Assembly: GCA_004431415.1 (NCBI GenBank)
Contig: QPMI01000489.1
Span: 1-64,000 of the forward strand
DNA: 64,000 nt
Reading direction: 5' to 3'
Origin: Cyanophora paradoxa CCMP329
Taxonomy: Eukaryota > Plantae > Glaucophyta
Both the position numbers and the translations under genes were made by a program. Shown one piece after another: positions 54,786 to 64,000 of the stretch; position 1 is the stretch's first letter, and each line of letters opens with the position of its first letter. The notes under the pieces are model-generated. The model was not told where the DNA came from. It saw only the letters and a program-made list of their open reading frames with translations, and did not search any database.

Positions 54786-55110
54786 CGTACTTAAGTGTGA
54801 AGGTAGCTATAGGCAGTAGCTCGATAAGATATATAGCAGTCAACAGGCGTCGCCGTGAAGGCAGAGGCGGCCAAGGCCGAGGGCTCCAAGGCCAGTTAGA
54901 GAAACCCCTAAACTTGCAAGTAGAATACGGTAGCTCGACAAGATAGCAGTGGATCGGTGCTGTTGACGCACTGCTGCGCCTAGCAGCTGCAGAGCTCGGG
55001 GCTACTGCAGCCGGGGGCTCCGGATCCCGGAGTTCGAAAGCGAAGGAACCGAAGCGCGAACGTTAGCGGCGGGAAGCTTAAGCTTGACCACGCCGTGACG
55101 ACCATGAAGC

Positions 55111-55397
55111 TTAAGGCGAGCGCCCGGCGGCCGCGGCCGCGCGCGCCAGCGCCGCGCGCGCGCGCGCGGCGTGCACATGCGGCGGCGCAACTTGCGATCG
55201 GCGACCGTCGGACTCCAGAGCTGCCGCAGCGCAGGATGCAGCTCCCGGAGTCCGACTCGGCGCCGGCGATACGTATACTTAAGGCGAGCTCGAGCGCCCG
55301 GCGGCCGCGCGCGCGCCAGCCATGGCCAGCGCCGCGCGCGCGCGCCAGCGCCGCCGCGGCGCGGCGCGACCGGTACCGGAGCTGCCGCAGCGCAGGA
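55111..55397. repeat. Diverged two-copy repeat (period ~168 bp) upstream of the peptidase gene
   Basis: TTAAGGCGAGC..GCCCGGCGGCCGCG at 55111 and 55279; GAGCTGCCGCAGCGCAGGA twice. Confidence 0.75.
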
Positions 55398-55560
55398 GCG
55401 CCAGATCTAGCGCAGCGCAGGATATATCTAAAGATCAAATTGCATGATCTCGGACGCGGGTTCGGCTCCGCAATTAGGGGTTTCGTGGCTGGCCCCGAAT
55501 GCGCCTCGCCGGAAGGCCTGCATCGCACCGCAGTCGTGTAGCTAGCTAGAAGAAGCCATC

Positions 55561-58500
55561 ATGGATCGCGCGGGCGAGCCAGACGAGCTCGATCCGCCGA
55601 AGCTCACCCCCACTCCGAGGCGCACATGGTCGCGCGGCGGCGAGAAGTCGCCCCCGATAGGCATCCCCGTTCCTCGCCGGCACGGTGCGGCCCGTGCGCT
55701 CGCGCACGGTCGGACTCGGGACTCACCAGGCGCCTCGCGTACGCAGCCGCCAGCCCGTTCTCGGACGGCGAGGGCGACTCGATGATGATGTTCCCGCCGC
55801 AAGATGGAGACTTCCCGCTCGACGGGAACCCGCGGCTGCTCGACTCCCCCCGATCGCTCCCTGACATGAAGCTCATCAGTTCCAGCCCGGACACGCTGCC
55901 CCTGAACGGGGCGCCGCCGTCAACGAGCATGGAATCGGACATGCCAGTCATTCGCATCGGCTCGCTCGAGATGCCCTCGCGGCTGGCGAAGGAGCCTGCG
56001 AAGAAGAAGGCCCCTCCGAAGCCGCCCGTCGCGCAGAAGATCCCACACCTCGTGAAGACCCCGTTCGAGGAGTATATAGACGAGTACCACTGGTTCCGCG
56101 ACAAGGCGAACCCCAAAGTCATGGAGTGCGCTACGCGCTGGAACGCGACATTTGATCCGCGCTCGCTGAGGCCGCGCAGGTACCTAGAATCCGAAAACAC
56201 GTACGCGGAAGCAATCATGAAGAACACGGAGGACCTTCAGACGACCCTGTACAACGAGTTCTGCTCCCGCTCGCTAGACGCGGATGCGGAGGCGCGCCCC
56301 GCCGATCGCCCCACGCCGCGTCCGCGCGCCGCGGGCTCAGGCGCGCGCAGGTTCCCATTCGCGTCGATAACTACTACTACTACAAGCGCACGGAGCCCGA
56401 CAAGCAGTACACGGTACGCGGCGGCGGCTGCAGCTGCCGCCGCGGCGCCCGCACGGCCGCCGCGGCCGACGCCTCCGCGCCCCTCCTCCGCAGGTCCACT
56501 GCCGAAAGTTCGACTCGCTTGACGCCTCCGAAGAGGTTGTTTTCGACGAGAACGAGTGGGCAGAGGGCGAGGACTACTTCGAGGTGGGCGTACCCGTACC
56601 CCCCGCCTCCGCCCCGCCGCCCCCACCGACGCGCGCCCGGCCCGGGTACAGCTTGGCGTCTTCGAGGTCGCGCCGAACCACAACATAGTCGCCCTGGGCA
56701 CCAACACGACCGGTGACGAGCGGTTCACCGTATACTTCAAGGCGGGCTTATCTGCTTCGCCCTATCTGCCTCTCCGGGATTCAAACCCGCCCCTCCTCGC
56801 AGGACCTGGGTACCGGCTCGCTCCTGGACGACGAGATTCCGGTGCGTCTGCCCGCCTTCCCCCCCGCCCCTCTCTCCGCGCCTCGCCTCCTGAAGCCGCC
56901 GCCAGAACGTAAACACGCTCCGCTGGGCCAACGACAACTCGAGCGTCCTGTACACGGTACCCCTCCCCCTCTCTGTCTGTCAGGCGATCCAACTCTATCG
57001 GCCACCGGGTGAACTTCCGCCTCAGGTGATCCACCCGACGACCGGGCGCTCGTACCGGCTCTACAGGCACCGCCTCGGTACACCCGTCGCCGAAGACGAG
57101 CTCATGCACTCGGTGCGCCCCTCCCCCCACTCGCTTCCCTCCCCCGCCCCTTCAGAGCGCCCCCCTCCCGTCCTTCATCTGAGCGCCCCCCACCCCCTCC
57201 CCCTCCCCCCGCCACCCTGCAGGAGGACGACGAGGCGTTCGTGCTGAGCATCTCGATGACGAACAGCGGCAAATTCTTCCTCCTCCGCCTCGCCGGTGCG
57301 TGCGCGGGGCGAAGGCGGGCGGGGCGGGCCGCGCGCCCTGCGGCGGCCAGACTAGACGGGGCAGGCAGGCAGGCAGCAGCTAGCTCCATTGTAGGGACGG
57401 CTCCATTGTTCTAGATTCGGGGGGAGGGGGGGGGGGAGGGGGGGTGGGGTGGGGGGGTTAGCTTGACGGCTCAAGGGCGTTCGACCGACAGGCCCAGCCC
57501 ATCCCATTCCAGCCCCGCCCCGCCCCGCCCCGCCCCGCTCCCCCAGCATTGTACCCCCCGCCTCACCCCCCGACCGCTTCTTCGTTCACAGACCAATCGA
57601 CGGCTGAGGTTCGCTTCATGGACGCCGACGACCCGAAGGGCTACTTCCGCGTCCTGTACCCCCGCGAGCCCAACATCGCCTACTTCGTCGAGGTCCGATT
57701 CTTCGCACTCAATTTACCCGTACCCCCTGCAGCTCTGCGATCAGATTTGATCTCATCTGATCTGATCTGATTTCGAGCAGCACCACGGGAACAAGTTCTT
57801 CGTTCTCACGAACGACGACGGCGCCGTCAACTTCAAGCTCGTGCAGGGTACCCCCTCGTTTCTTCCCCCCCCCTCGGCGTCGGTTTGAACAGCCGCGGGG
57901 CAGTACCCGTCATCTCGCCGCAGAAGAAGAACTGGCGGGAGGTCCTCGCCAGCAACGAGCAGGTACCGCTCCCGTACCCCCCTTCCTTCCCTTCCCGCCT
58001 TCCCGTACCCCTCACCGCCCCTTCCCGTACCCCCCTCTTTTGCAGGTGCTTCTGGAGCAGATGTTCGTGTACAAGCACCACTTAGTCCTCTTCTGCCTCC
58101 GCGACACCCACCGCGTCATCAAGGTCAGATCCGATCCGATCCGAACCGATCCGATTTCTGATCCGATCTGATCTGATCCGACTTCTCCCCCCCTCCCATC
58201 GCTCAGATCATGGACTTGTCGGACGGGGAGTGGCACACGGTCGAGTTCGGCGAGCGTCTCACAAGCGTCTGGCCGGGCAACTACGACGACGAGGACATTC
58301 GCATGGTCCGAGCGCACGTATATATAAGATCCACGGTTCAGTATAAGTCTAGAAGCCCAAAACGACATCCGCATGGTTCGAGCACAAGCACACACATAAG
58401 ACCCGCGGCTCATATATGAGACTATAGACTGGGACCTACATATTATAAACTATAGATGACGAACACATCCGCATGGTCCGAGCGCACATATTCGACCCGC

Positions 58501-60846
58501 GTTTCAGTTTTGTTAGCTCGCTTAGGAGCTCAGAGCTCAGACTATAGACAGACTATAGACTGGGCCCGAGACACAAAGTCGAAGAGCCCAAGAGCACATC
58601 ACTCTGTCTATGTCTCCTTTCTTCCTGCCGAATATCTGCCTGATACCCCCCGCTCCCCCCCCCCCCAGATCACGGCGTACAAGACGAACAAGATCCGCTT
58701 CCTGAAGTCCTCCTTCCTCGACCCGGTACCCCCCTCCCCGCCCGCCGAATCCCCGTACCCCCCTCCGTTCCTAACAGGAGCGGCGGCTCCTTTTCGCAGG
58801 CGACGTACTATGACTACGACATGGACAACCGCGCCAAGACGAAGCGAAAGGTCCGCAGCGAACGAAGCGAGGGCGGGCTAGCTGGCCGGCCAGCTAGCCA
58901 AGCCGGACGCTTAGACGGTTAGCTGCGACGAAGGGAAAGGTCCGGATCCGGGGGGGTGGGCGAGGGGAGGGCACGGTGCCAGCCAGACCTACAAGACCTA
59001 TAGGGCGTACCGGTAGCTAAGCCAGTCTTAGCCGGACGGGTCTGAGCCAGTCTCGGCCCGGTTAGCTGCGCCCCCTCCTCTCCCCCGCCGGGGCTGACAG
59101 ACCGATCGAGCGCAGACCGACACGGTTCTGGGGGGGTACGTCCCGGCCATCTACCACCAGGAGGTCCGTTCAGCTCGAAGCGAGCGTACCCGTACCCGTG
59201 CCGAATCGTGCCCCGCCGTCCTGGTTCTGATTCTTCTGTCCCGGTTTCAGCGCATCTTCGCGACCGGTCACGATGGCGTGGAGGTGGGTTCCGGCCGTGT
59301 CTTTGCCCACGACCTTTAGATTCACGCACCCCCCTCCGCCCAGATCCCCATCTCGCTCGTGTTCCGCAAGGATATGCGGGACCCCGAGAACGGCAACTAC
59401 TGCCTGGTACCCCCTTTCCGTGCACGCGTACCCCCGGGCTCCCGCGAACCCCGTACCCCAGATGGAGGCGTACGGCGCGTACGGCGGAAACAAGCACCCC
59501 CGCTTCGATCCCCACAAGGTCCGAAAATCGCTGTACCCCTCAGCTCGCAGCTTATACCCCCCTGCAGCTCTCCCTCCTCGACCGCGGCTTCGTCTACGCG
59601 ATCGCGCACGTCCGGTACCCCCCTTTGCGCCTCCGTACCCCTCGACGGCCCTCACGCTCCCCCGCAGCGGCTCGGGCATGAGGGGACGCCAGTGGTACCT
59701 CCAGGGCAAGGTTTTCAACAAAAAGGTACCCCTCCCGCTTTCTTACATCGTTCGTTGCCCAACGGTGTACCCCAGAACACGTTTTACGACTTCATATCCT
59801 GCGCCAAGCACCTCGTTAGCGCGGGGTACACCCGCCACGAAAGGTCCGCCGCCGTACCCCTCCGAAACGTTCTTTCCCCTTCGCCTTATCCCGAGCTTCC
59901 TTCCTTCCTTCCTGTACCCCAGGCTCGCGATCTACGGGCGCTCGGCGGGCGGACTCCTCATGGGCGCCGTGTTGAACATGGCCCCTGAGCTGTTCAAGGT
60001 CGCTGTCGTCGAGGTCCGCGTACCCCCCGGCGCTTCCCCCCCCACGCCCGCGACGTCTCCCGGTTCGAATCCGAGCAGGTGCCTTTCGTGGACTGCATCA
60101 ACACGATGATCGACCCGAGCATCCCGTGGGTCGCCTTCGAGTACTCGGAATGCGCGTACCCCCCTTCCCCTTCCTCCGCACTTTTCCCCTTGTAACCCAG
60201 GGCGCAGGGGGCGATCCCCGGTCCAGCCGAGAGATGTACGACTACATGAAGAGCTACAGGTACCCCTGGATCACTTCGCCCCCCCTCCCCCCCAACCTCC
60301 CGATCGTCACTCACGCCCCGGCAGCCCGTACGACAACGTCAAGCCGCAGAACTACCCCCACATCCTAATCAGTGCGCCCATCTTGTACCCCCCCCCCCTC
60401 CACGCCACGCCGCCCGCCTATCCTCCGCCGCGCTCACCTCTCCTCAGCGACCGGCTGGAACGACCCCCGGGTACAGTACTGGGAGCCCACGAAGTGGACC
60501 GCCCGCCTCCGGTGCCCCTACCCCCCCTTTCCCTTCTTCCCCGTACCCCCGTTCCATCTTAACCCGGCCCGGGCGTACCCCCCAGGGCCGTGAAGGAAGA
60601 CTCGAACATTCTGCTGCTCCGGACGCACATCGCGGGTGCGCGGGGCGCCGGCGCCTTCGGGGGAGGCTAGAGAGGCTTTCCGCGCGGTGCTTTCCTAAGA
60701 TGCAGGACTTTCCGATAAGGCTACGCCTTCCTCTCTGCCCTCCTCCCTCTCAACCCCCCCCCTCCCCCCGCAGGGCACATGGGGAGCACGGGGCGGTACG
60801 ACCACCTCGAGGACCTCGCCTTCAACTACGCCTTCGTCATCGACAG
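55561..60846 (+). CDS. opdB: Oligopeptidase B / protease II (S9A) portion of a many-exon gene
   Basis: PPVAQKIPH..DEYHWFRD..YLESENTY; beta-propeller exons; YGAYG, LSLLDRGFVYAIAHVRG, NTFYDFI, GRSAGGLL (Ser), VPFVD, EYSEWGDP, SPYDN, NDPRVQYWEPTKW (Asp), AGHMG (His), YAFVID. Confidence 0.95.
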
Positions 60847-61034
60847 GCGCCCGCCCGCCCGTCTCTTTAGCTCCAAAAGCTTTAGCTTCCTTAGCTTCCT
60901 ACTTAGCTTCCTTCTTAGCTCTTGAAGAGTCGTTTTAGCTCTGTGTCTTCGTCATCGACCGGCGCCCGCCCCGCTCCACTCCGCTCTGGGTGGGTGAACG
61001 CTCACTCGCCTGTCGGCCGCCTCCGCGTGCGCAG

Positions 61035-64000
61035 GCTGGAGGTGCAGCGGCACATCACGGTGGCGCAGCCGCTGGTCAAGGTCGTCCCGCCGACTGCCCT
61101 CGCCCCCGTAGACCTCATCCGCATGTTCCAGGGCTTCCAGGTCCGTCGAGTTGACCGATCTAATCCCCGTCAGCCAATGGGTCGGTTTGATAATATAAGC
61201 CAATTTAGATTAGACGAGATTCGGGGCTCCTCTAGACGACGCCTTTCAAGGCTTTGGATGCTTGAGACGGCTCTTGCTTGTCCCCAGTTTCATCGAGAGC
61301 CCGGCTTCTTAAGACGGCCTTGGTCTAGTGTGGGGCATGCCTAACCAACGCGCCCGCCGTCTTAAGACGGCCTTGTTAAGACGGCCTTGGTCTAGTGTGG
61401 CTCGTCTAACCAACGCACGCGCCCCTCGCCTCGCCTCGCCCCACCAACGTGGTCGAACAAACTCCGAGACTCTTTCCCACCGACGCACGCGCCCGCCCCT
61501 CGCCTCGCCCTCAGATCACGATGGCGCTGCACGCGGCGCTGGAGCTCGGCCTCTTCGACCACCTCGCCCGCGCCGGCCGCGCCTCCTGCGACGCCCTCGC
61601 AGAGGCCGTCAACTGCAGGTCCGCCCGCAGCATAGCATCGGGGAGGGGAGGGAGGGAGGATGGCGAGCTAGCTGGGTAGCTGGGCAGCTGGGTGGCTGGG
61701 CCGGCCCAGCCCAGCGTCGCGCTAAGGGCTCCTGTACAAGCGCTGAAAGCTCTGGACGCGCCTCACCTCCTTCGCCCCGCGGCGCAGCGAGCGGGGTACG
61801 CGGATCCTGGCGGACGCGCTGGTGGCGGCCGGCCTCCTGGAGCTCATCGACGGCGACTACACAAACTCCGAGGTCCGCCCGCCCCTTAAAGAGGGCTTTC
61901 TAGGGCTTCTGGGGCTTTCTAGGAAGGTCCGCGGGGGAGGCTGTGGGGGCGAGGGGCGGCGCGAGACGTAGGATGGGGGGACTGGCGCCGGCGTCTCTGT
62001 TTCAGCAAGTGGCGGCTTCTTGGGGCTTCTAGGGCCACTCCGAGGTCCTTGGTCCGCGGGGAGAAGGCTGCGGGGTCGAGGGGCGAGCGGCTTTATGGGG
62101 CTCCAGAGTGCGAGGCAAAGTCGAGGAAGAGCCCGAGAGGGAAGGAAAGAAGAAGAAGACGAAGTTAACTAAGCAAGCTTACTAACTGACTAGCTAGCTA
62201 GCTAACTGCTTAGCTAGCTAACTAACTGATTAGCTAGCTAACTAACTGATTAGCTAGCTAACTAACCAACTAGCGCACTAACTGGACGATTCCGGGGTCT
62301 TCGCGCCGGCTCACCCCGCCCGCCCCCCCGCCCGCCCGCGCAGGTGGCGGCGACGCACCTCGTCCGCGGCCTCGCCAACTACATCGGCGACGTGCGCCGC
62401 TACCCCCCTGCCCGCCCCGATCCCACTACCCCTCCTCCCTGCCCCCCTCCCCCCCCCCCCCCCCCCTGCACCCGAGCGCCCTTCCTTCTCCGCCCTCTTC
62501 TCCCTCTCCTCCCTTCCTTCACCCTCTACCCCCTCCCTGAGCCCTGTACCCCCGGCAGGTGCGGAACTACCTCGTGAACGACTTCATGTGGGACGCCATC
62601 CGCCGCCTTCCCGAGGCCGTCCGCGACGGCGGGCCCAAGGTCAGATCAGATCGGATCCGATCAGATCAGATCAGATTTGATCTGAGCCCATCTGAGATTC
62701 GATCCGATCTGATCTGATTTGATCCGAGCAGAGGCCTGCGGAGGCGGAGGCGGAGGGGGGCCCCGGCGTCGCCCTCTCCCACATGCAGCAGGCCCGCCCT
62801 GTACCCCCCTCTCCTCTCCCCCCCTCTCCCGCTTCCTTCTCTCTTGTTCTTCTTTCTTTCGATGCGCTGAGGCCTTTTTGCGAACGCTCGCAGCATTGGG
62901 AGAACGTGGCCCGCTACAATACCGTTCAGTCGGCGAGGTACCCCTCCCGCCCTCTTTCCCCCCCCCCCCTTCCTGAGCCTCTCTCGCCTCGTTCGCAGCG
63001 TCGGGCAACAGGTTACGTCCCTGCTCGCCCCCTGGGCCGGTGCGCGTTCTGTACCCCTCCACTCGTCCCCTCCCACTTACCCTCCTGCACCCCCAGCGAG
63101 GCACAAGCCGCTGCACGTGCTGGACGTCGGCTGCGGCGCCGGTTTCCTGGGTACGAAAGTCGTACCCCCCAGATCCTTCTTATCCAGTTTCTTCGTCTCA
63201 CGCCTTCTAATTTCCCTTCCGCGCAGGCTTCAGCGTGCTACAGAGGCACGCCCACGCGCGCCTGTGGAGCCTGGACTGGCCCTCGATCATCTCGATCGCC
63301 CGCGGCTACGGTACCCCCCTTCTCTCCCCTCCCCTCCCCTCTCTTTCGCTTACCTTCTTCTTTCGTTCGCCTCAGCCGAGCAGCTTCAGCTGAGCGAGCG
63401 CGTGACGTTCATCGAGGGCGACCTATTCCTTACCCCCCTCGGCGGGCCCTACGACCTCATCGTCCTCGGCCAGGTCCGTACGCCCCTCCGCCACTCGGAT
63501 TGCGTACCCCCCCCCCTCCCGAGCTTATTCCCCTCTTTTTCGGCGCAGGTCCTGCACCAGCTTTCGGAGGAGCAGTGCAACCTTTTCCTGCGGCGAATCC
63601 TGACGGTCCTCAAGCCCTCCGGACGCGTCGTCATTCACGAAACTGTCTCGTGCGCCGTACCCCTCCCTCCCTTTCTCCCCCGCCCCGATCCCCCCGGGGG
63701 GGTACACGGGCGAGCGTCCGAGCGCGGTGGGCGGGGGTACAGGGGCCTCGACGACGGCTCCTCCTCCATCCACCCCTCCCTCTTCTCCCTCTCCATGCTC
63801 GTCCAGGTCCGCGTACCTTCCAAAAACCTCGCCTACCCCCCTTTGACCCCTCTACCCCCCAAAAGGCACCCGAGGGCGAGGCGTACCCCCTGTCCTGGTA
63901 CCAGCGGGTCCTCTCGGACGCGGGCTTCGCCCCCCCCTCCCTGCACCACCTCCAGGTCCGTCTTCTCTCCCCCCCTCCCTCCGGCTTCTGTACCCCCTCA
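61035..64000 (+). CDS. O-methyltransferase (dimerisation + Methyltransf_2 type), probably the C-terminal domain of the peptidase gene; runs off window
   Basis: LIRMFQGFQ|ITMALHAALELGLFDHL; RILADALVAAGLL..YTNSE; VLDVGCGAG; LDWPSII; RVTFIEGDLF..YDLIVLGQ|VLHQLS..LKPSGRVVIHE; GEAYPLSWYQRVLSDAGF. Confidence 0.88.
62164..62283. repeat. Intronic (AACT/AGCT)n simple repeat with ~20-bp period
   Basis: TAGCTAGCTAACTAACTGAT repeated. (GATCA/GATCT/GATCC)n tracts also occur at ~57740-57770, 58125-58180 and 62640-62725. Confidence 0.9.

What the first reader, a model, noticed from the sequence alone, without database searches (positions are those of the whole stretch)
55561..64000. Oligopeptidase B fused to an O-methyltransferase
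Seen: the peptidase exon ends ..YAFVID-AG|gcgccc and splices in phase (60847-61034) to G-CTG.., giving RLEVQRHITVAQPLVKVVPPTALAPVDLIRMFQGFQ|ITMALHAALELGLFD: a short linker, then a dimerisation plus SAM-binding O-methyltransferase. The Ser/Asp/His triad and DVGCGAG are intact. Known: OpdB is normally a stand-alone S9A peptidase cutting after basic residues; S9A enzymes act as macrocyclases in amatoxin, orbitide and omphalotin pathways, the last alongside a (different-family) methyltransferase. Inference: a cleave-and-methylate peptide-tailoring or signalling enzyme. No precursor peptide gene was seen.
Basis: partly seen in the sequence, partly recalled or inferred. Interest (0 to 1): 0.8.

Follow-up and report, generated by a model that had tools for sequence, protein, structure and literature searches.

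The report
Peptidase–methyltransferase fusion gene in Cyanophora
In the alga Cyanophora paradoxa, spliced RNA shows that a trypsin-like oligopeptidase B gene and a bacterial-type methyltransferase gene, annotated as two genes, form one reading frame for a two-enzyme protein of about 1,200 residues; its purpose is unknown.

Summary
I rebuilt a 44-exon, stop-free model of 1,167 residues (55626-63955) that runs off the window end.

- **Splicing:** intron-free contigs from four studies run from the peptidase exons across 60846|61035 (a GC-AG intron) and 61140|61515 into the methyltransferase exons. Contig positions fit the model to the base at eight check points. The TGA at 60923 is spliced out.
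- **Domains:** exon-by-exon scans give collinear Peptidase_S9_N, Peptidase_S9, Dimerisation and Methyltransf_2 hits. Solved oligopeptidase B chains are the best matches. The Ser670/Asp756/His790 triad, the DVGCGAG SAM motif and the conserved His are present.
- **Organism and annotation:** EukProt identifies Cyanophora paradoxa. Its annotation (g14711.t1) calls a truncated stand-alone methyltransferase, and the RNA contradicts that model.
- **Methyltransferase origin:** the domain's first helix lies in exon 31, spliced to the peptidase. The nearest relatives found are stand-alone bacterial or metagenomic enzymes, 46% identical or less, often in natural-product-type clusters. None of 162 such loci has an S9A peptidase nearby or fused.

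The fusion is real. I could not search for the same architecture elsewhere, because no long query existed by reference. The scan has not found this on other DNA.

The parts
55626..64000 (+). Fused gene, 44 exons within the window. The open reading frame is 1,167 residues and continues past the window end.
   Evidence: Exons: 55626-56125, 56180-56291, 56351-56413, 56494-56583, 56652-56741, 56803-56841, 56906-56956, 57026-57112, 57223-57295, 57592-57692, 57781-57847, 57904-57962, 58046-58123, 58207-58305, 58669-58725, 58800-58850, 59116-59163, 59251-59283, 59344-59406, 59462-59518, 59568-59614, 59668-59725, 59776-59843, 59923-60013, 60079-60151, 60208-60259, 60325-60371, 60448-60511, 60586-60635, 60774-60846, 61035-61140, 61515-61618, 61788-61872, 62344-62391, 62559-62639, 62732-62791, 62894-62937, 62999-63039, 63097-63150, 63227-63310, 63376-63473, 63549-63649, 63743-63806, 63866-63955. 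The model has no stop codon. From 58207 onward it fits the RNA contigs to the base. Exons before 58123 are inferred from frame, splice sites and collinear Pfam hits.
55626..56030 (+). N-terminal extension of about 135 residues, rich in Arg, Ala, Ser and Pro, with no family match.
   Evidence: Exon 1 has no Pfam hit. The start codon is the first in-frame ATG after the in-frame stop at 55539-55541. The true start was not verified.
55561..55785 (+). Upstream ATG in another frame, opening a 74-codon ORF.
   Evidence: It would lie inside the X1 contig's 5' end if exon 1 has no intron (offset 109).
56031..59406 (+). S9A beta-propeller domain, from the end of exon 1 to about exon 19.
   Evidence: Collinear exon hits to Peptidase_S9_N at profile positions 36-66, 73-92, 94-124, 126-155, 193-222 and 284-305. 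Each hit is below the family cut-off on its own (E 0.007-0.07).
59462..60846 (+). S9 catalytic alpha/beta-hydrolase domain, exons 20-30. Triad: Ser670 (59942-59944, within GRSAGG), Asp756 (60462-60464), His790 (60776-60778).
   Evidence: - Peptidase_S9 hit on the Ser exon, E 1.7e-8.
- Best solved matches are all oligopeptidase B: 2xe4, 4bp8, 7ne7.
- The last exon aligns to residues 651-672 of the 676-residue Serratia OpdB, so the domain is complete at the splice donor.
60139..60150 (+). E-Y-S-E, the S1/S2 specificity stretch of oligopeptidase B. Serratia has E-Y-D-E here.
   Evidence: Alignment. The first Glu is kept and the second acidic residue is Ser. Assigning these to the P1 and P2 roles rests on my memory of the Salmonella OpdB Glu576/Glu578 work.
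60847..61034 (+). Intron 30, GC..AG, 188 nt. It contains the in-frame TGA at 60923-60925 that would end a stand-alone peptidase.
   Evidence: It is skipped in the contigs of all four runs. The 359-nt contig distance matches the exon sum.
60832..60971 (+). 25-nt direct repeat (60832-60856 and 60947-60971, 96% identical, spacing 115 nt). The first copy spans the exon 30 donor. TTAGCT-type repeats lie between the copies.
   Evidence: It suggests a 115-nt duplication or insertion inside the fusion intron. The TGA lies in the inserted part.
61035..61140 (+). Exon 31: a linker of about 24 residues followed by the first helix of the methyltransferase (PVDLIRMFQGFQ). It contains ATG 61123.
   Evidence: - Spliced on both sides in the RNA contigs.
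- Its last 14 residues match the N-termini of bacterial relatives: 71% identity in L002 and L003, just upstream of the main match.
- The family consensus in alignment A1 agrees.
61515..61872 (+). O-methyltransferase dimerisation domain, exons 32-33.
   Evidence: PF08100 hit with E 2e-6 on exon 32 alone and E 6e-12 on P0001.
62344..64000 (+). Methyltransf_2 catalytic domain, exons 34-44. SAM motif DVGCGAG is at 63123-63143 and the conserved His1085 at 63555-63557. The last ~29 residues lie beyond the window.
   Evidence: - PF00891 hit with E 3.4e-23 on P0001.
- 44 columns are invariant across 21 family members, including these residues.
- The contig continues past 63955 with letters that encode GAGEKLLVTS, as in P0001.

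Best explanation
This is one nuclear gene of Cyanophora paradoxa. Its mature mRNA encodes a two-enzyme protein of about 1,196 residues.

**Layout**
- A low-complexity N-terminal extension.
- A complete oligopeptidase-B-type S9A serine peptidase (beta-propeller plus Ser670/Asp756/His790 hydrolase domain).
- A linker of about 24 residues.
- A complete Methyltransf_2-family SAM-dependent methyltransferase with its dimerisation domain.

**Shown**
- The exon structure from 58207 onward, the in-frame splice that removes the peptidase stop, and the intact catalytic motifs.
- The peptidase's closest solved relatives are oligopeptidase B chains.
- The methyltransferase's closest relatives found are bacterial or metagenomic.

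**Inferred**
- The fusion arose when a bacterial-type methyltransferase gene downstream of the peptidase gene was captured by a GC-AG intron that skips the peptidase's last few codons and its stop.
- The protein dimerises through the methyltransferase.
- The peptidase module cuts short peptides after Arg or Lys. The first specificity Glu is kept; the second is Ser, so the preference for paired basic residues is probably relaxed.
- The methyltransferase module methylates a small, probably phenolic, substrate, using the conserved His as base.

I put the fused protein being made at about 0.8. I put one module acting on the other's product at about 0.25.
For: **Fused transcript**
- Intron-free contigs in four studies join the two halves. 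X1 (3,994 nt) and X5 (3,791 nt) each do so in a single contig.
- The model is stop-free over 1,167 residues and fits contig positions at eight points with a constant offset of 109.

**Domains**
- Collinear Pfam hits exon by exon.
- Oligopeptidase B structures are the top PDB hits for the Ser, Asp, His and S1 exons.
- The peptidase is complete to within about four residues of a bacterial OpdB C-terminus at the donor.

**Methyltransferase**
- The family's conserved N-terminal helix is encoded in exon 31, upstream of the annotated start.
- 44 columns are invariant across 21 members, including the SAM-motif residues and His.
- The nearest relatives found are stand-alone bacterial or metagenomic proteins of 330-350 residues, 41% identical by BLASTP and 46% in the alignment.
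- 13 introns in the methyltransferase part show it is resident in the nuclear genome.
Against: - All RNA evidence comes from assembled contigs, which drop minor isoforms and give no transcript ends. The runs are only guessed to be RNA by their records, although intron-free contigs can only come from spliced RNA.
- The public annotation (P0001 = g14711.t1) calls a separate methyltransferase.
- ATG 61123 sits where some bacterial relatives start, so an internal start is possible.
- There is no protein-level evidence.
- No second organism with the fusion was found or could be searched for.
- Exons before 58123 and the start codon are not RNA-checked.
Confidence: 0.8

Rival explanations
1. Dedicated cleave-and-methylate enzyme. 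The peptidase releases or trims a peptide, and the fused methyltransferase methylates that same product, as in a RiPP-like or signalling-peptide pathway.
For: - Stable in-frame fusions usually join functionally linked enzymes (general Rosetta-stone reasoning).
- Tyrosine- and amino-acid-directed members of this fold exist among the solved relatives: MfnG and SibL.
- The closest metagenomic relative, P0002, sits beside a radical-SAM/SPASM gene. This is a single case.
Against: - 0 of 162 bacterial or metagenomic loci of the methyltransferase family carry an S9A peptidase within 8-10 kb.
- Recurrent neighbours are natural-product small-molecule enzymes.
- RiPP methyltransferase models score far below their cut-offs.
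- Known S9A macrocyclases are prolyl-oligopeptidase type, whereas all best solved matches here are oligopeptidase B.
- No precursor gene was seen.
Confidence: 0.2
2. Two separate genes, as annotated. The fused contigs reflect a conjoined read-through transcript, and the proteins actually made are a stand-alone peptidase (ending at TGA 60923 when the intron is retained) and a stand-alone methyltransferase starting at ATG 61123 or 61521.
For: - The annotation has a 382-residue stand-alone model.
- Three of 20 bacterial relatives in A1 start at the position of ATG 61123.
- Contigs cannot exclude minor isoforms.
Against: - Every contig that reaches the junction, in four studies, is spliced 60846|61035 and is in frame.
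- No contig covers 60847-61031 as an unspliced continuation. The only extra piece there diverges at 61032 and so comes from elsewhere.
- The annotated model is contradicted by the RNA. It lacks the conserved first helix and carries a 37-residue stretch derived from an intron, which the contig lengths exclude.
Confidence: 0.1
3. Assembly or contamination artefact: the bacterial-type methyltransferase is not really next to the peptidase in the alga.
For: The nearest relatives found are all bacterial or metagenomic.
Against: - The methyltransferase part has 13 spliceosomal introns of the same style as the peptidase part.
- Independent RNA contigs join the two halves with no differing letters.
- DNA run X12 holds 92% of the stretch's sampled words.
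Confidence: 0.02

Closest known systems
Oligopeptidase B (MEROPS S9A; solved examples Leishmania major 2xe4, Trypanosoma brucei 4bp8, Serratia proteamaculans 7ne7)
   Same: It has the propeller plus alpha/beta-hydrolase layout, the GxSxGG Ser, the Asp in (N/H)D..VQYWEP and the His in GH.G. It also has the EWG(D/N)P and SYSPYDN stretches. OpdB chains outrank prolyl endopeptidases for every exon tested.
   Different: - It carries an N-terminal extension of about 135 residues.
- A methyltransferase replaces the last few C-terminal residues.
- The second acidic specificity residue is Ser.
Methyltransf_2 small-molecule methyltransferases (2r3s from Nostoc, uncharacterised; RedM; ASMT 4a6d; DnrK; DsyB)
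   Same: It has the dimerisation domain plus Rossmann SAM domain, the glycine-rich motif, and the conserved His and Glu. Match to 2r3s is E 5e-32; PF00891 is E 3e-23.
   Different: - It is 46% identical or less to any relative found.
- It is fused behind a peptidase, whereas all 79 relatives found are stand-alone proteins of 216-434 residues. That search could only see proteins up to 668 residues.
- The substrate and the atom methylated are unknown.
S9A macrocyclases with partner methyltransferases (omphalotin OphP with OphMA; amatoxin POPB; orbitide PCY1)
   Same: An S9A peptidase is functionally associated with peptide tailoring. This comparison rests on my general knowledge.
   Different: - Those are prolyl-oligopeptidase-type enzymes encoded separately from their partners.
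- OphMA belongs to an unrelated methyltransferase family.
- There is no precursor peptide here and no evidence of macrocyclisation.

Membership tests
Peptidase family S9A, oligopeptidase B subtype | N-terminal beta-propeller domain (Peptidase_S9_N) | tested here: met
   Six exons hit PF02897 in collinear order, profile positions 36-305. Each is below the family cut-off alone (E 0.007-0.07). The joined model was not scanned.
Peptidase family S9A, oligopeptidase B subtype | Catalytic domain with Ser, Asp, His in that order, and GxSxGG around the Ser | tested here: met
   PF00326 E 1.7e-8 on the Ser exon. The Asp and His exons align to the catalytic stretches of Serratia OpdB.
Peptidase family S9A, oligopeptidase B subtype | Closer to OpdB than to prolyl endopeptidase | tested here: met
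   OpdB chains top the PDB list for all four exons tested. Prolyl endopeptidases score lower or are absent.
Peptidase family S9A, oligopeptidase B subtype | Acidic pair that selects basic P1/P2 residues (Glu576/Glu578 of Salmonella OpdB, recalled from memory) | tested here: inconclusive
   E-Y-S-E here against E-Y-D-E in Serratia. The first Glu is present and the second acidic residue is replaced by Ser.
Peptidase family S9A, oligopeptidase B subtype | Cleavage after Arg/Lys of peptides under about 30 residues | not testable with these tools
   This needs an enzyme assay.
Methyltransf_2 (COMT/ASMT-like) SAM-dependent methyltransferases | N-terminal dimerisation domain | tested here: met
   PF08100 E 2e-6 on exon 32 and E 6e-12 on P0001. 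The first helix in exon 31 matches bacterial N-termini.
Methyltransf_2 (COMT/ASMT-like) SAM-dependent methyltransferases | Methyltransf_2 catalytic domain with the glycine-rich SAM motif | tested here: met
   PF00891 E 3.4e-23, above its cut-off. The SAM-motif residues D, C, G, G of DVGCGAG lie in invariant columns of A1.
Methyltransf_2 (COMT/ASMT-like) SAM-dependent methyltransferases | Catalytic His base typical of O-methylating members | tested here: met
   His271 of P0001 (His1085 of the model) is invariant in 21 sequences. Its role as base is inferred from the family, and O-, N-, C- or S-methylation cannot be told apart from the sequence.
RiPP macrocyclase/tailoring systems with S9A peptidases | Prolyl-oligopeptidase-type enzyme with a precursor peptide gene nearby | tested here: not met
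   The peptidase is OpdB-type. No precursor was identified. ORFs upstream (44-55.5 kb) gave no informative Pfam hit, though that is a weak test in an intron-rich genome.

The most novel reading that the evidence does not exclude
The fusion marks a new peptide-derived metabolite or signal pathway in glaucophytes. The OpdB module would excise a short peptide or amino acid after a basic residue, and the attached bacterial-derived methyltransferase would methylate it, for example on a Tyr hydroxyl or a carboxylate, within one dimeric enzyme. The architecture would be unique to this lineage.
Probability: 0.15. Interest if true: 0.7.

Novelty: new variant of a known kind. Interest (0 to 1): 0.45.

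Why it matters
- **Annotation:** it corrects the Cyanophora annotation. Two gene models become one, and the annotated methyltransferase is truncated and carries intron-derived residues.
- **Gene fusion mechanism:** it gives a clean example of a fusion made by an intron that skips a stop codon. It joins a eukaryote-style peptidase gene to a methyltransferase whose closest relatives found are bacterial.
- **Enzymology:** if the two activities are coupled, this would be the first oligopeptidase B tied to a defined downstream chemistry. The physiological substrates of that enzyme family are still poorly known.
- **If not coupled:** it is an ordinary lineage-specific domain fusion.

Tried and rejected
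- I assembled it only inside a script to check frame and lengths. All searches were exon by exon, by reference.
- **No architecture search:** for that reason I could not run an architecture search for long fused proteins. The search for homologous proteins sees only 0.55-1.75 times the query length, and no long stop-free reference exists.
- **Representative search:** exon 42 (33 residues) against 1.84 billion representatives of any length found only Cyanophora's own P0001. So there is no close orthologue, fused or not, in that library. A 33-residue query cannot see distant relatives.
- **Metagenome scans:** the scan with P0001 found nothing. The scan with alignment A1 found only bacterial-type relatives, 46% identical or less.
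- **Neighbourhood test:** no S9A peptidase next to methyltransferase relatives, 0 of 162 loci over 2.1 Mb.
- **Literature:** four full-text searches found no paper on such a fusion.
- **Atlas look-alikes:** all were plain bacterial Methyltransf_2 clusters.
- **NCBIfam:** only sub-threshold generic class-I hits.
- **Upstream ORFs (44-55.5 kb):** nothing informative.
- **Extra depth at 60858-61054 in X1 and X5:** I rejected it as intron retention, because that contig diverges at 61032 instead of continuing into exon 31.
- **First neighbour-clustering script:** it timed out and was redone.
Full report
**What is there**

The region is GC-rich eukaryotic DNA with very short exons. Starting from the three-frame translation and the splice joints seen in RNA contigs, I built a model of 44 exons from 55626 to 63955. 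It translates without a stop into 1,167 residues and runs off the window end. Five of the 43 introns are GC-AG, including the critical one at 60847-61034, so a GC donor is normal for this gene.

**RNA evidence for the fusion**

The look-up of sequencing runs listed eleven runs of one organism that hold about 0.23 of the stretch's sampled words, which is close to the exon share. It also listed four runs filed in 2012 under one sample, holding 0.41-0.92 of the words, which are probably the DNA source.

I laid Logan contigs of four runs from four studies (X1, X5, X8, X16) on 58100-64000. They touch the window only in exon-sized pieces with no differing letters, so they derive from spliced RNA even though the run records do not say so.

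- In X1 (3,994 nt) and X5 (3,791 nt), one contig covers peptidase exons (58205-58304, 59921-60011). It then covers 61032-61137, 61512-61614, 61784-61870 and continues to 63864-63956.
- X8 (1,802 nt) and X16 (2,615 nt) contigs also cross from the peptidase into 61032-61137.
- The contig distance between 60013 and 61035 is 359 nt. That is exactly the sum of my six exons ending at 60846.
- Eight check points from 58207 to 63866 all fit the model with one constant offset of 109.
- The three letters CAG fit both sides of the joint. This is why the aligner places it at 61032.

The TGA at 60923-60925 is therefore spliced out, and the frame continues from ..YAFVID into the linker and the methyltransferase. 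A small extra piece of depth in 60858-61054 in X1 and X5 belongs to a contig that diverges at 61032, so it is not retained intron. Contigs cannot exclude minor isoforms and do not show transcript ends.

**Domains, exon by exon**

Pfam scans of single exons give collinear hits:
- Peptidase_S9_N at profile positions 36 to 305, over six exons.
- Peptidase_S9 at positions 43-63, 66-94 (E 1.7e-8, the GRSAGG exon) and 151-170.
- Dimerisation PF08100 (E 2e-6) on 61515-61616.
- Methyltransf_2 (E 6e-4) on 63549-63647.

Against solved structures, the Ser, S1, Asp and His exons all hit oligopeptidase B first: Leishmania 2xe4, Trypanosoma 4bp8 and Serratia 7ne7. The last peptidase exon aligns to residues 651-672 of the 676-residue Serratia enzyme. 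The peptidase is therefore complete at the splice donor and loses only its last few residues.

The triad is Ser670, Asp756, His790, numbering from ATG 55626. The specificity stretch reads E-Y-S-E where Serratia has E-Y-D-E. From memory of the Salmonella OpdB work, the first Glu governs P1 and the second acidic residue governs P2. The first is kept here and the second is not.

**Organism and annotation**

A 33-residue methyltransferase exon, searched against 1.84 billion representative proteins of any length, hit only P0001 at 100% identity. P0001 is EukProt Cyanophora paradoxa tig00020851_g14711.t1, 382 residues. The genome is therefore the glaucophyte Cyanophora paradoxa, as an earlier follow-up note in this scan also states.

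P0001 is an annotated stand-alone methyltransferase starting at MALHAALE (ATG 61521). The RNA contradicts it in two ways:
- It lacks the family's first helix.
- It carries 37 residues taken from intron 61873-62343, which the contig lengths exclude.

P0001's C-terminus (GAGEKLLVTS plus 19 more residues) agrees with the letters by which the contigs continue beyond 63955. This gives a total of about 1,196 residues.

**The methyltransferase half**

P0001 passes the Pfam cut-offs for Methyltransf_2 (E 3e-23) and Dimerisation (E 6e-12). NCBIfam gives only sub-threshold generic hits.

Its best solved relatives are 2r3s (an uncharacterised Nostoc protein, E 5e-32), RedM, ASMT, DnrK and DsyB. The family methylates O, N, C or S atoms of small molecules, and the atom cannot be read from the sequence.

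The word search found 79 relatives, all stand-alone proteins of 216-434 residues from bacteria or metagenomes. The best is 41% identical by BLASTP and 46% in the alignment. This search only sees proteins up to 668 residues.

The alignment shows that the family begins with ..SP.(D/E)(I/P)(I/L).(M/L).QG.Q.T(A/S)IL... Exon 31 ends PVDLIRMFQGFQ and exon 32 begins ITMAL, so the domain starts inside exon 31, the exon spliced to the peptidase. Three relatives start at the Met equivalent to ATG 61123, which keeps an internal-start isoform conceivable.

**Context of the relatives**

I fetched 162 loci of relatives, 2.1 Mb in all: two by exact look-up, 80 from bacterial genomes and 80 from metagenomes. 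None contains anything matching peptidase exons 2-30.

Recurrent neighbours in Actinomycetota are EryCIII-type glycosyltransferases, a second O-methyltransferase, NDP-sugar nucleotidyltransferases, FAD aromatic-ring hydroxylases, SDRs and SARP regulators. That is a natural-product, small-molecule context. Neither the fusion nor the linkage is inherited from bacteria. The family background points to a small-molecule substrate rather than a peptide.

**How it most likely works**

Shown:
- One spliced mRNA carries one open frame with two complete, motif-intact catalytic modules.

Inferred:
- The fusion arose because intron 30 skips the peptidase's tail and stop. A 25-nt direct repeat with 115-nt spacing straddles that donor, so the intron has been remodelled.
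- The protein dimerises through the methyltransferase.
- The peptidase cuts short peptides after basic residues.
- The methyltransferase methylates a small, probably phenolic, substrate.

I put the fused protein at 0.8, direct coupling of the two reactions at about 0.2-0.25, and separate proteins as the main products at about 0.1.

**Novelty**

Both halves belong to well-known families. The architecture was not found in the literature searches or among the relatives I could reach. I class it as a new variant of a known kind, of moderate interest.

Noticed in passing
window 60832-60856 and 60947-60971: A 25-nt direct repeat (96% identical, 115 nt apart) duplicates the exon 30/intron 30 boundary inside the fusion intron, with TTAGCT-type microsatellite between the copies. 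The in-frame TGA lies in this inserted part.
   Followed up: partly
window 57739-57771, 58128-58186, 62641-62732: The same GATC(T/C)-type short tandem repeat sits in three different introns of this gene. Other introns carry TAGCT-type arrays (61669-61701, 62172-62283).
   Followed up: no
window 55100-55370: Just upstream of the gene there are two similar blocks: cttaaggcgagc followed by a GC-only alternating run (GCGCGCGCC..). Their role, promoter-proximal repeat or otherwise, is unknown.
   Followed up: no
window 55561-55785: An upstream ATG in good context opens a 74-codon ORF in another frame that overlaps the main start at 55626. It would be a uORF if exon 1 has no intron.
   Followed up: partly
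P0001 (EukProt Cyanophora g14711.t1), window 61521 onward: The public gene model is truncated at the N-terminus and includes 37 residues from intron 61873-62343 that are absent from the RNA contigs.
   Followed up: yes
L001:7529-9673 (minus strand), beside L001:10001-11050: The closest metagenomic relative of the methyltransferase (P0002) is divergently adjacent to a 714-residue radical-SAM/SPASM protein. This is a single case.
   Followed up: no
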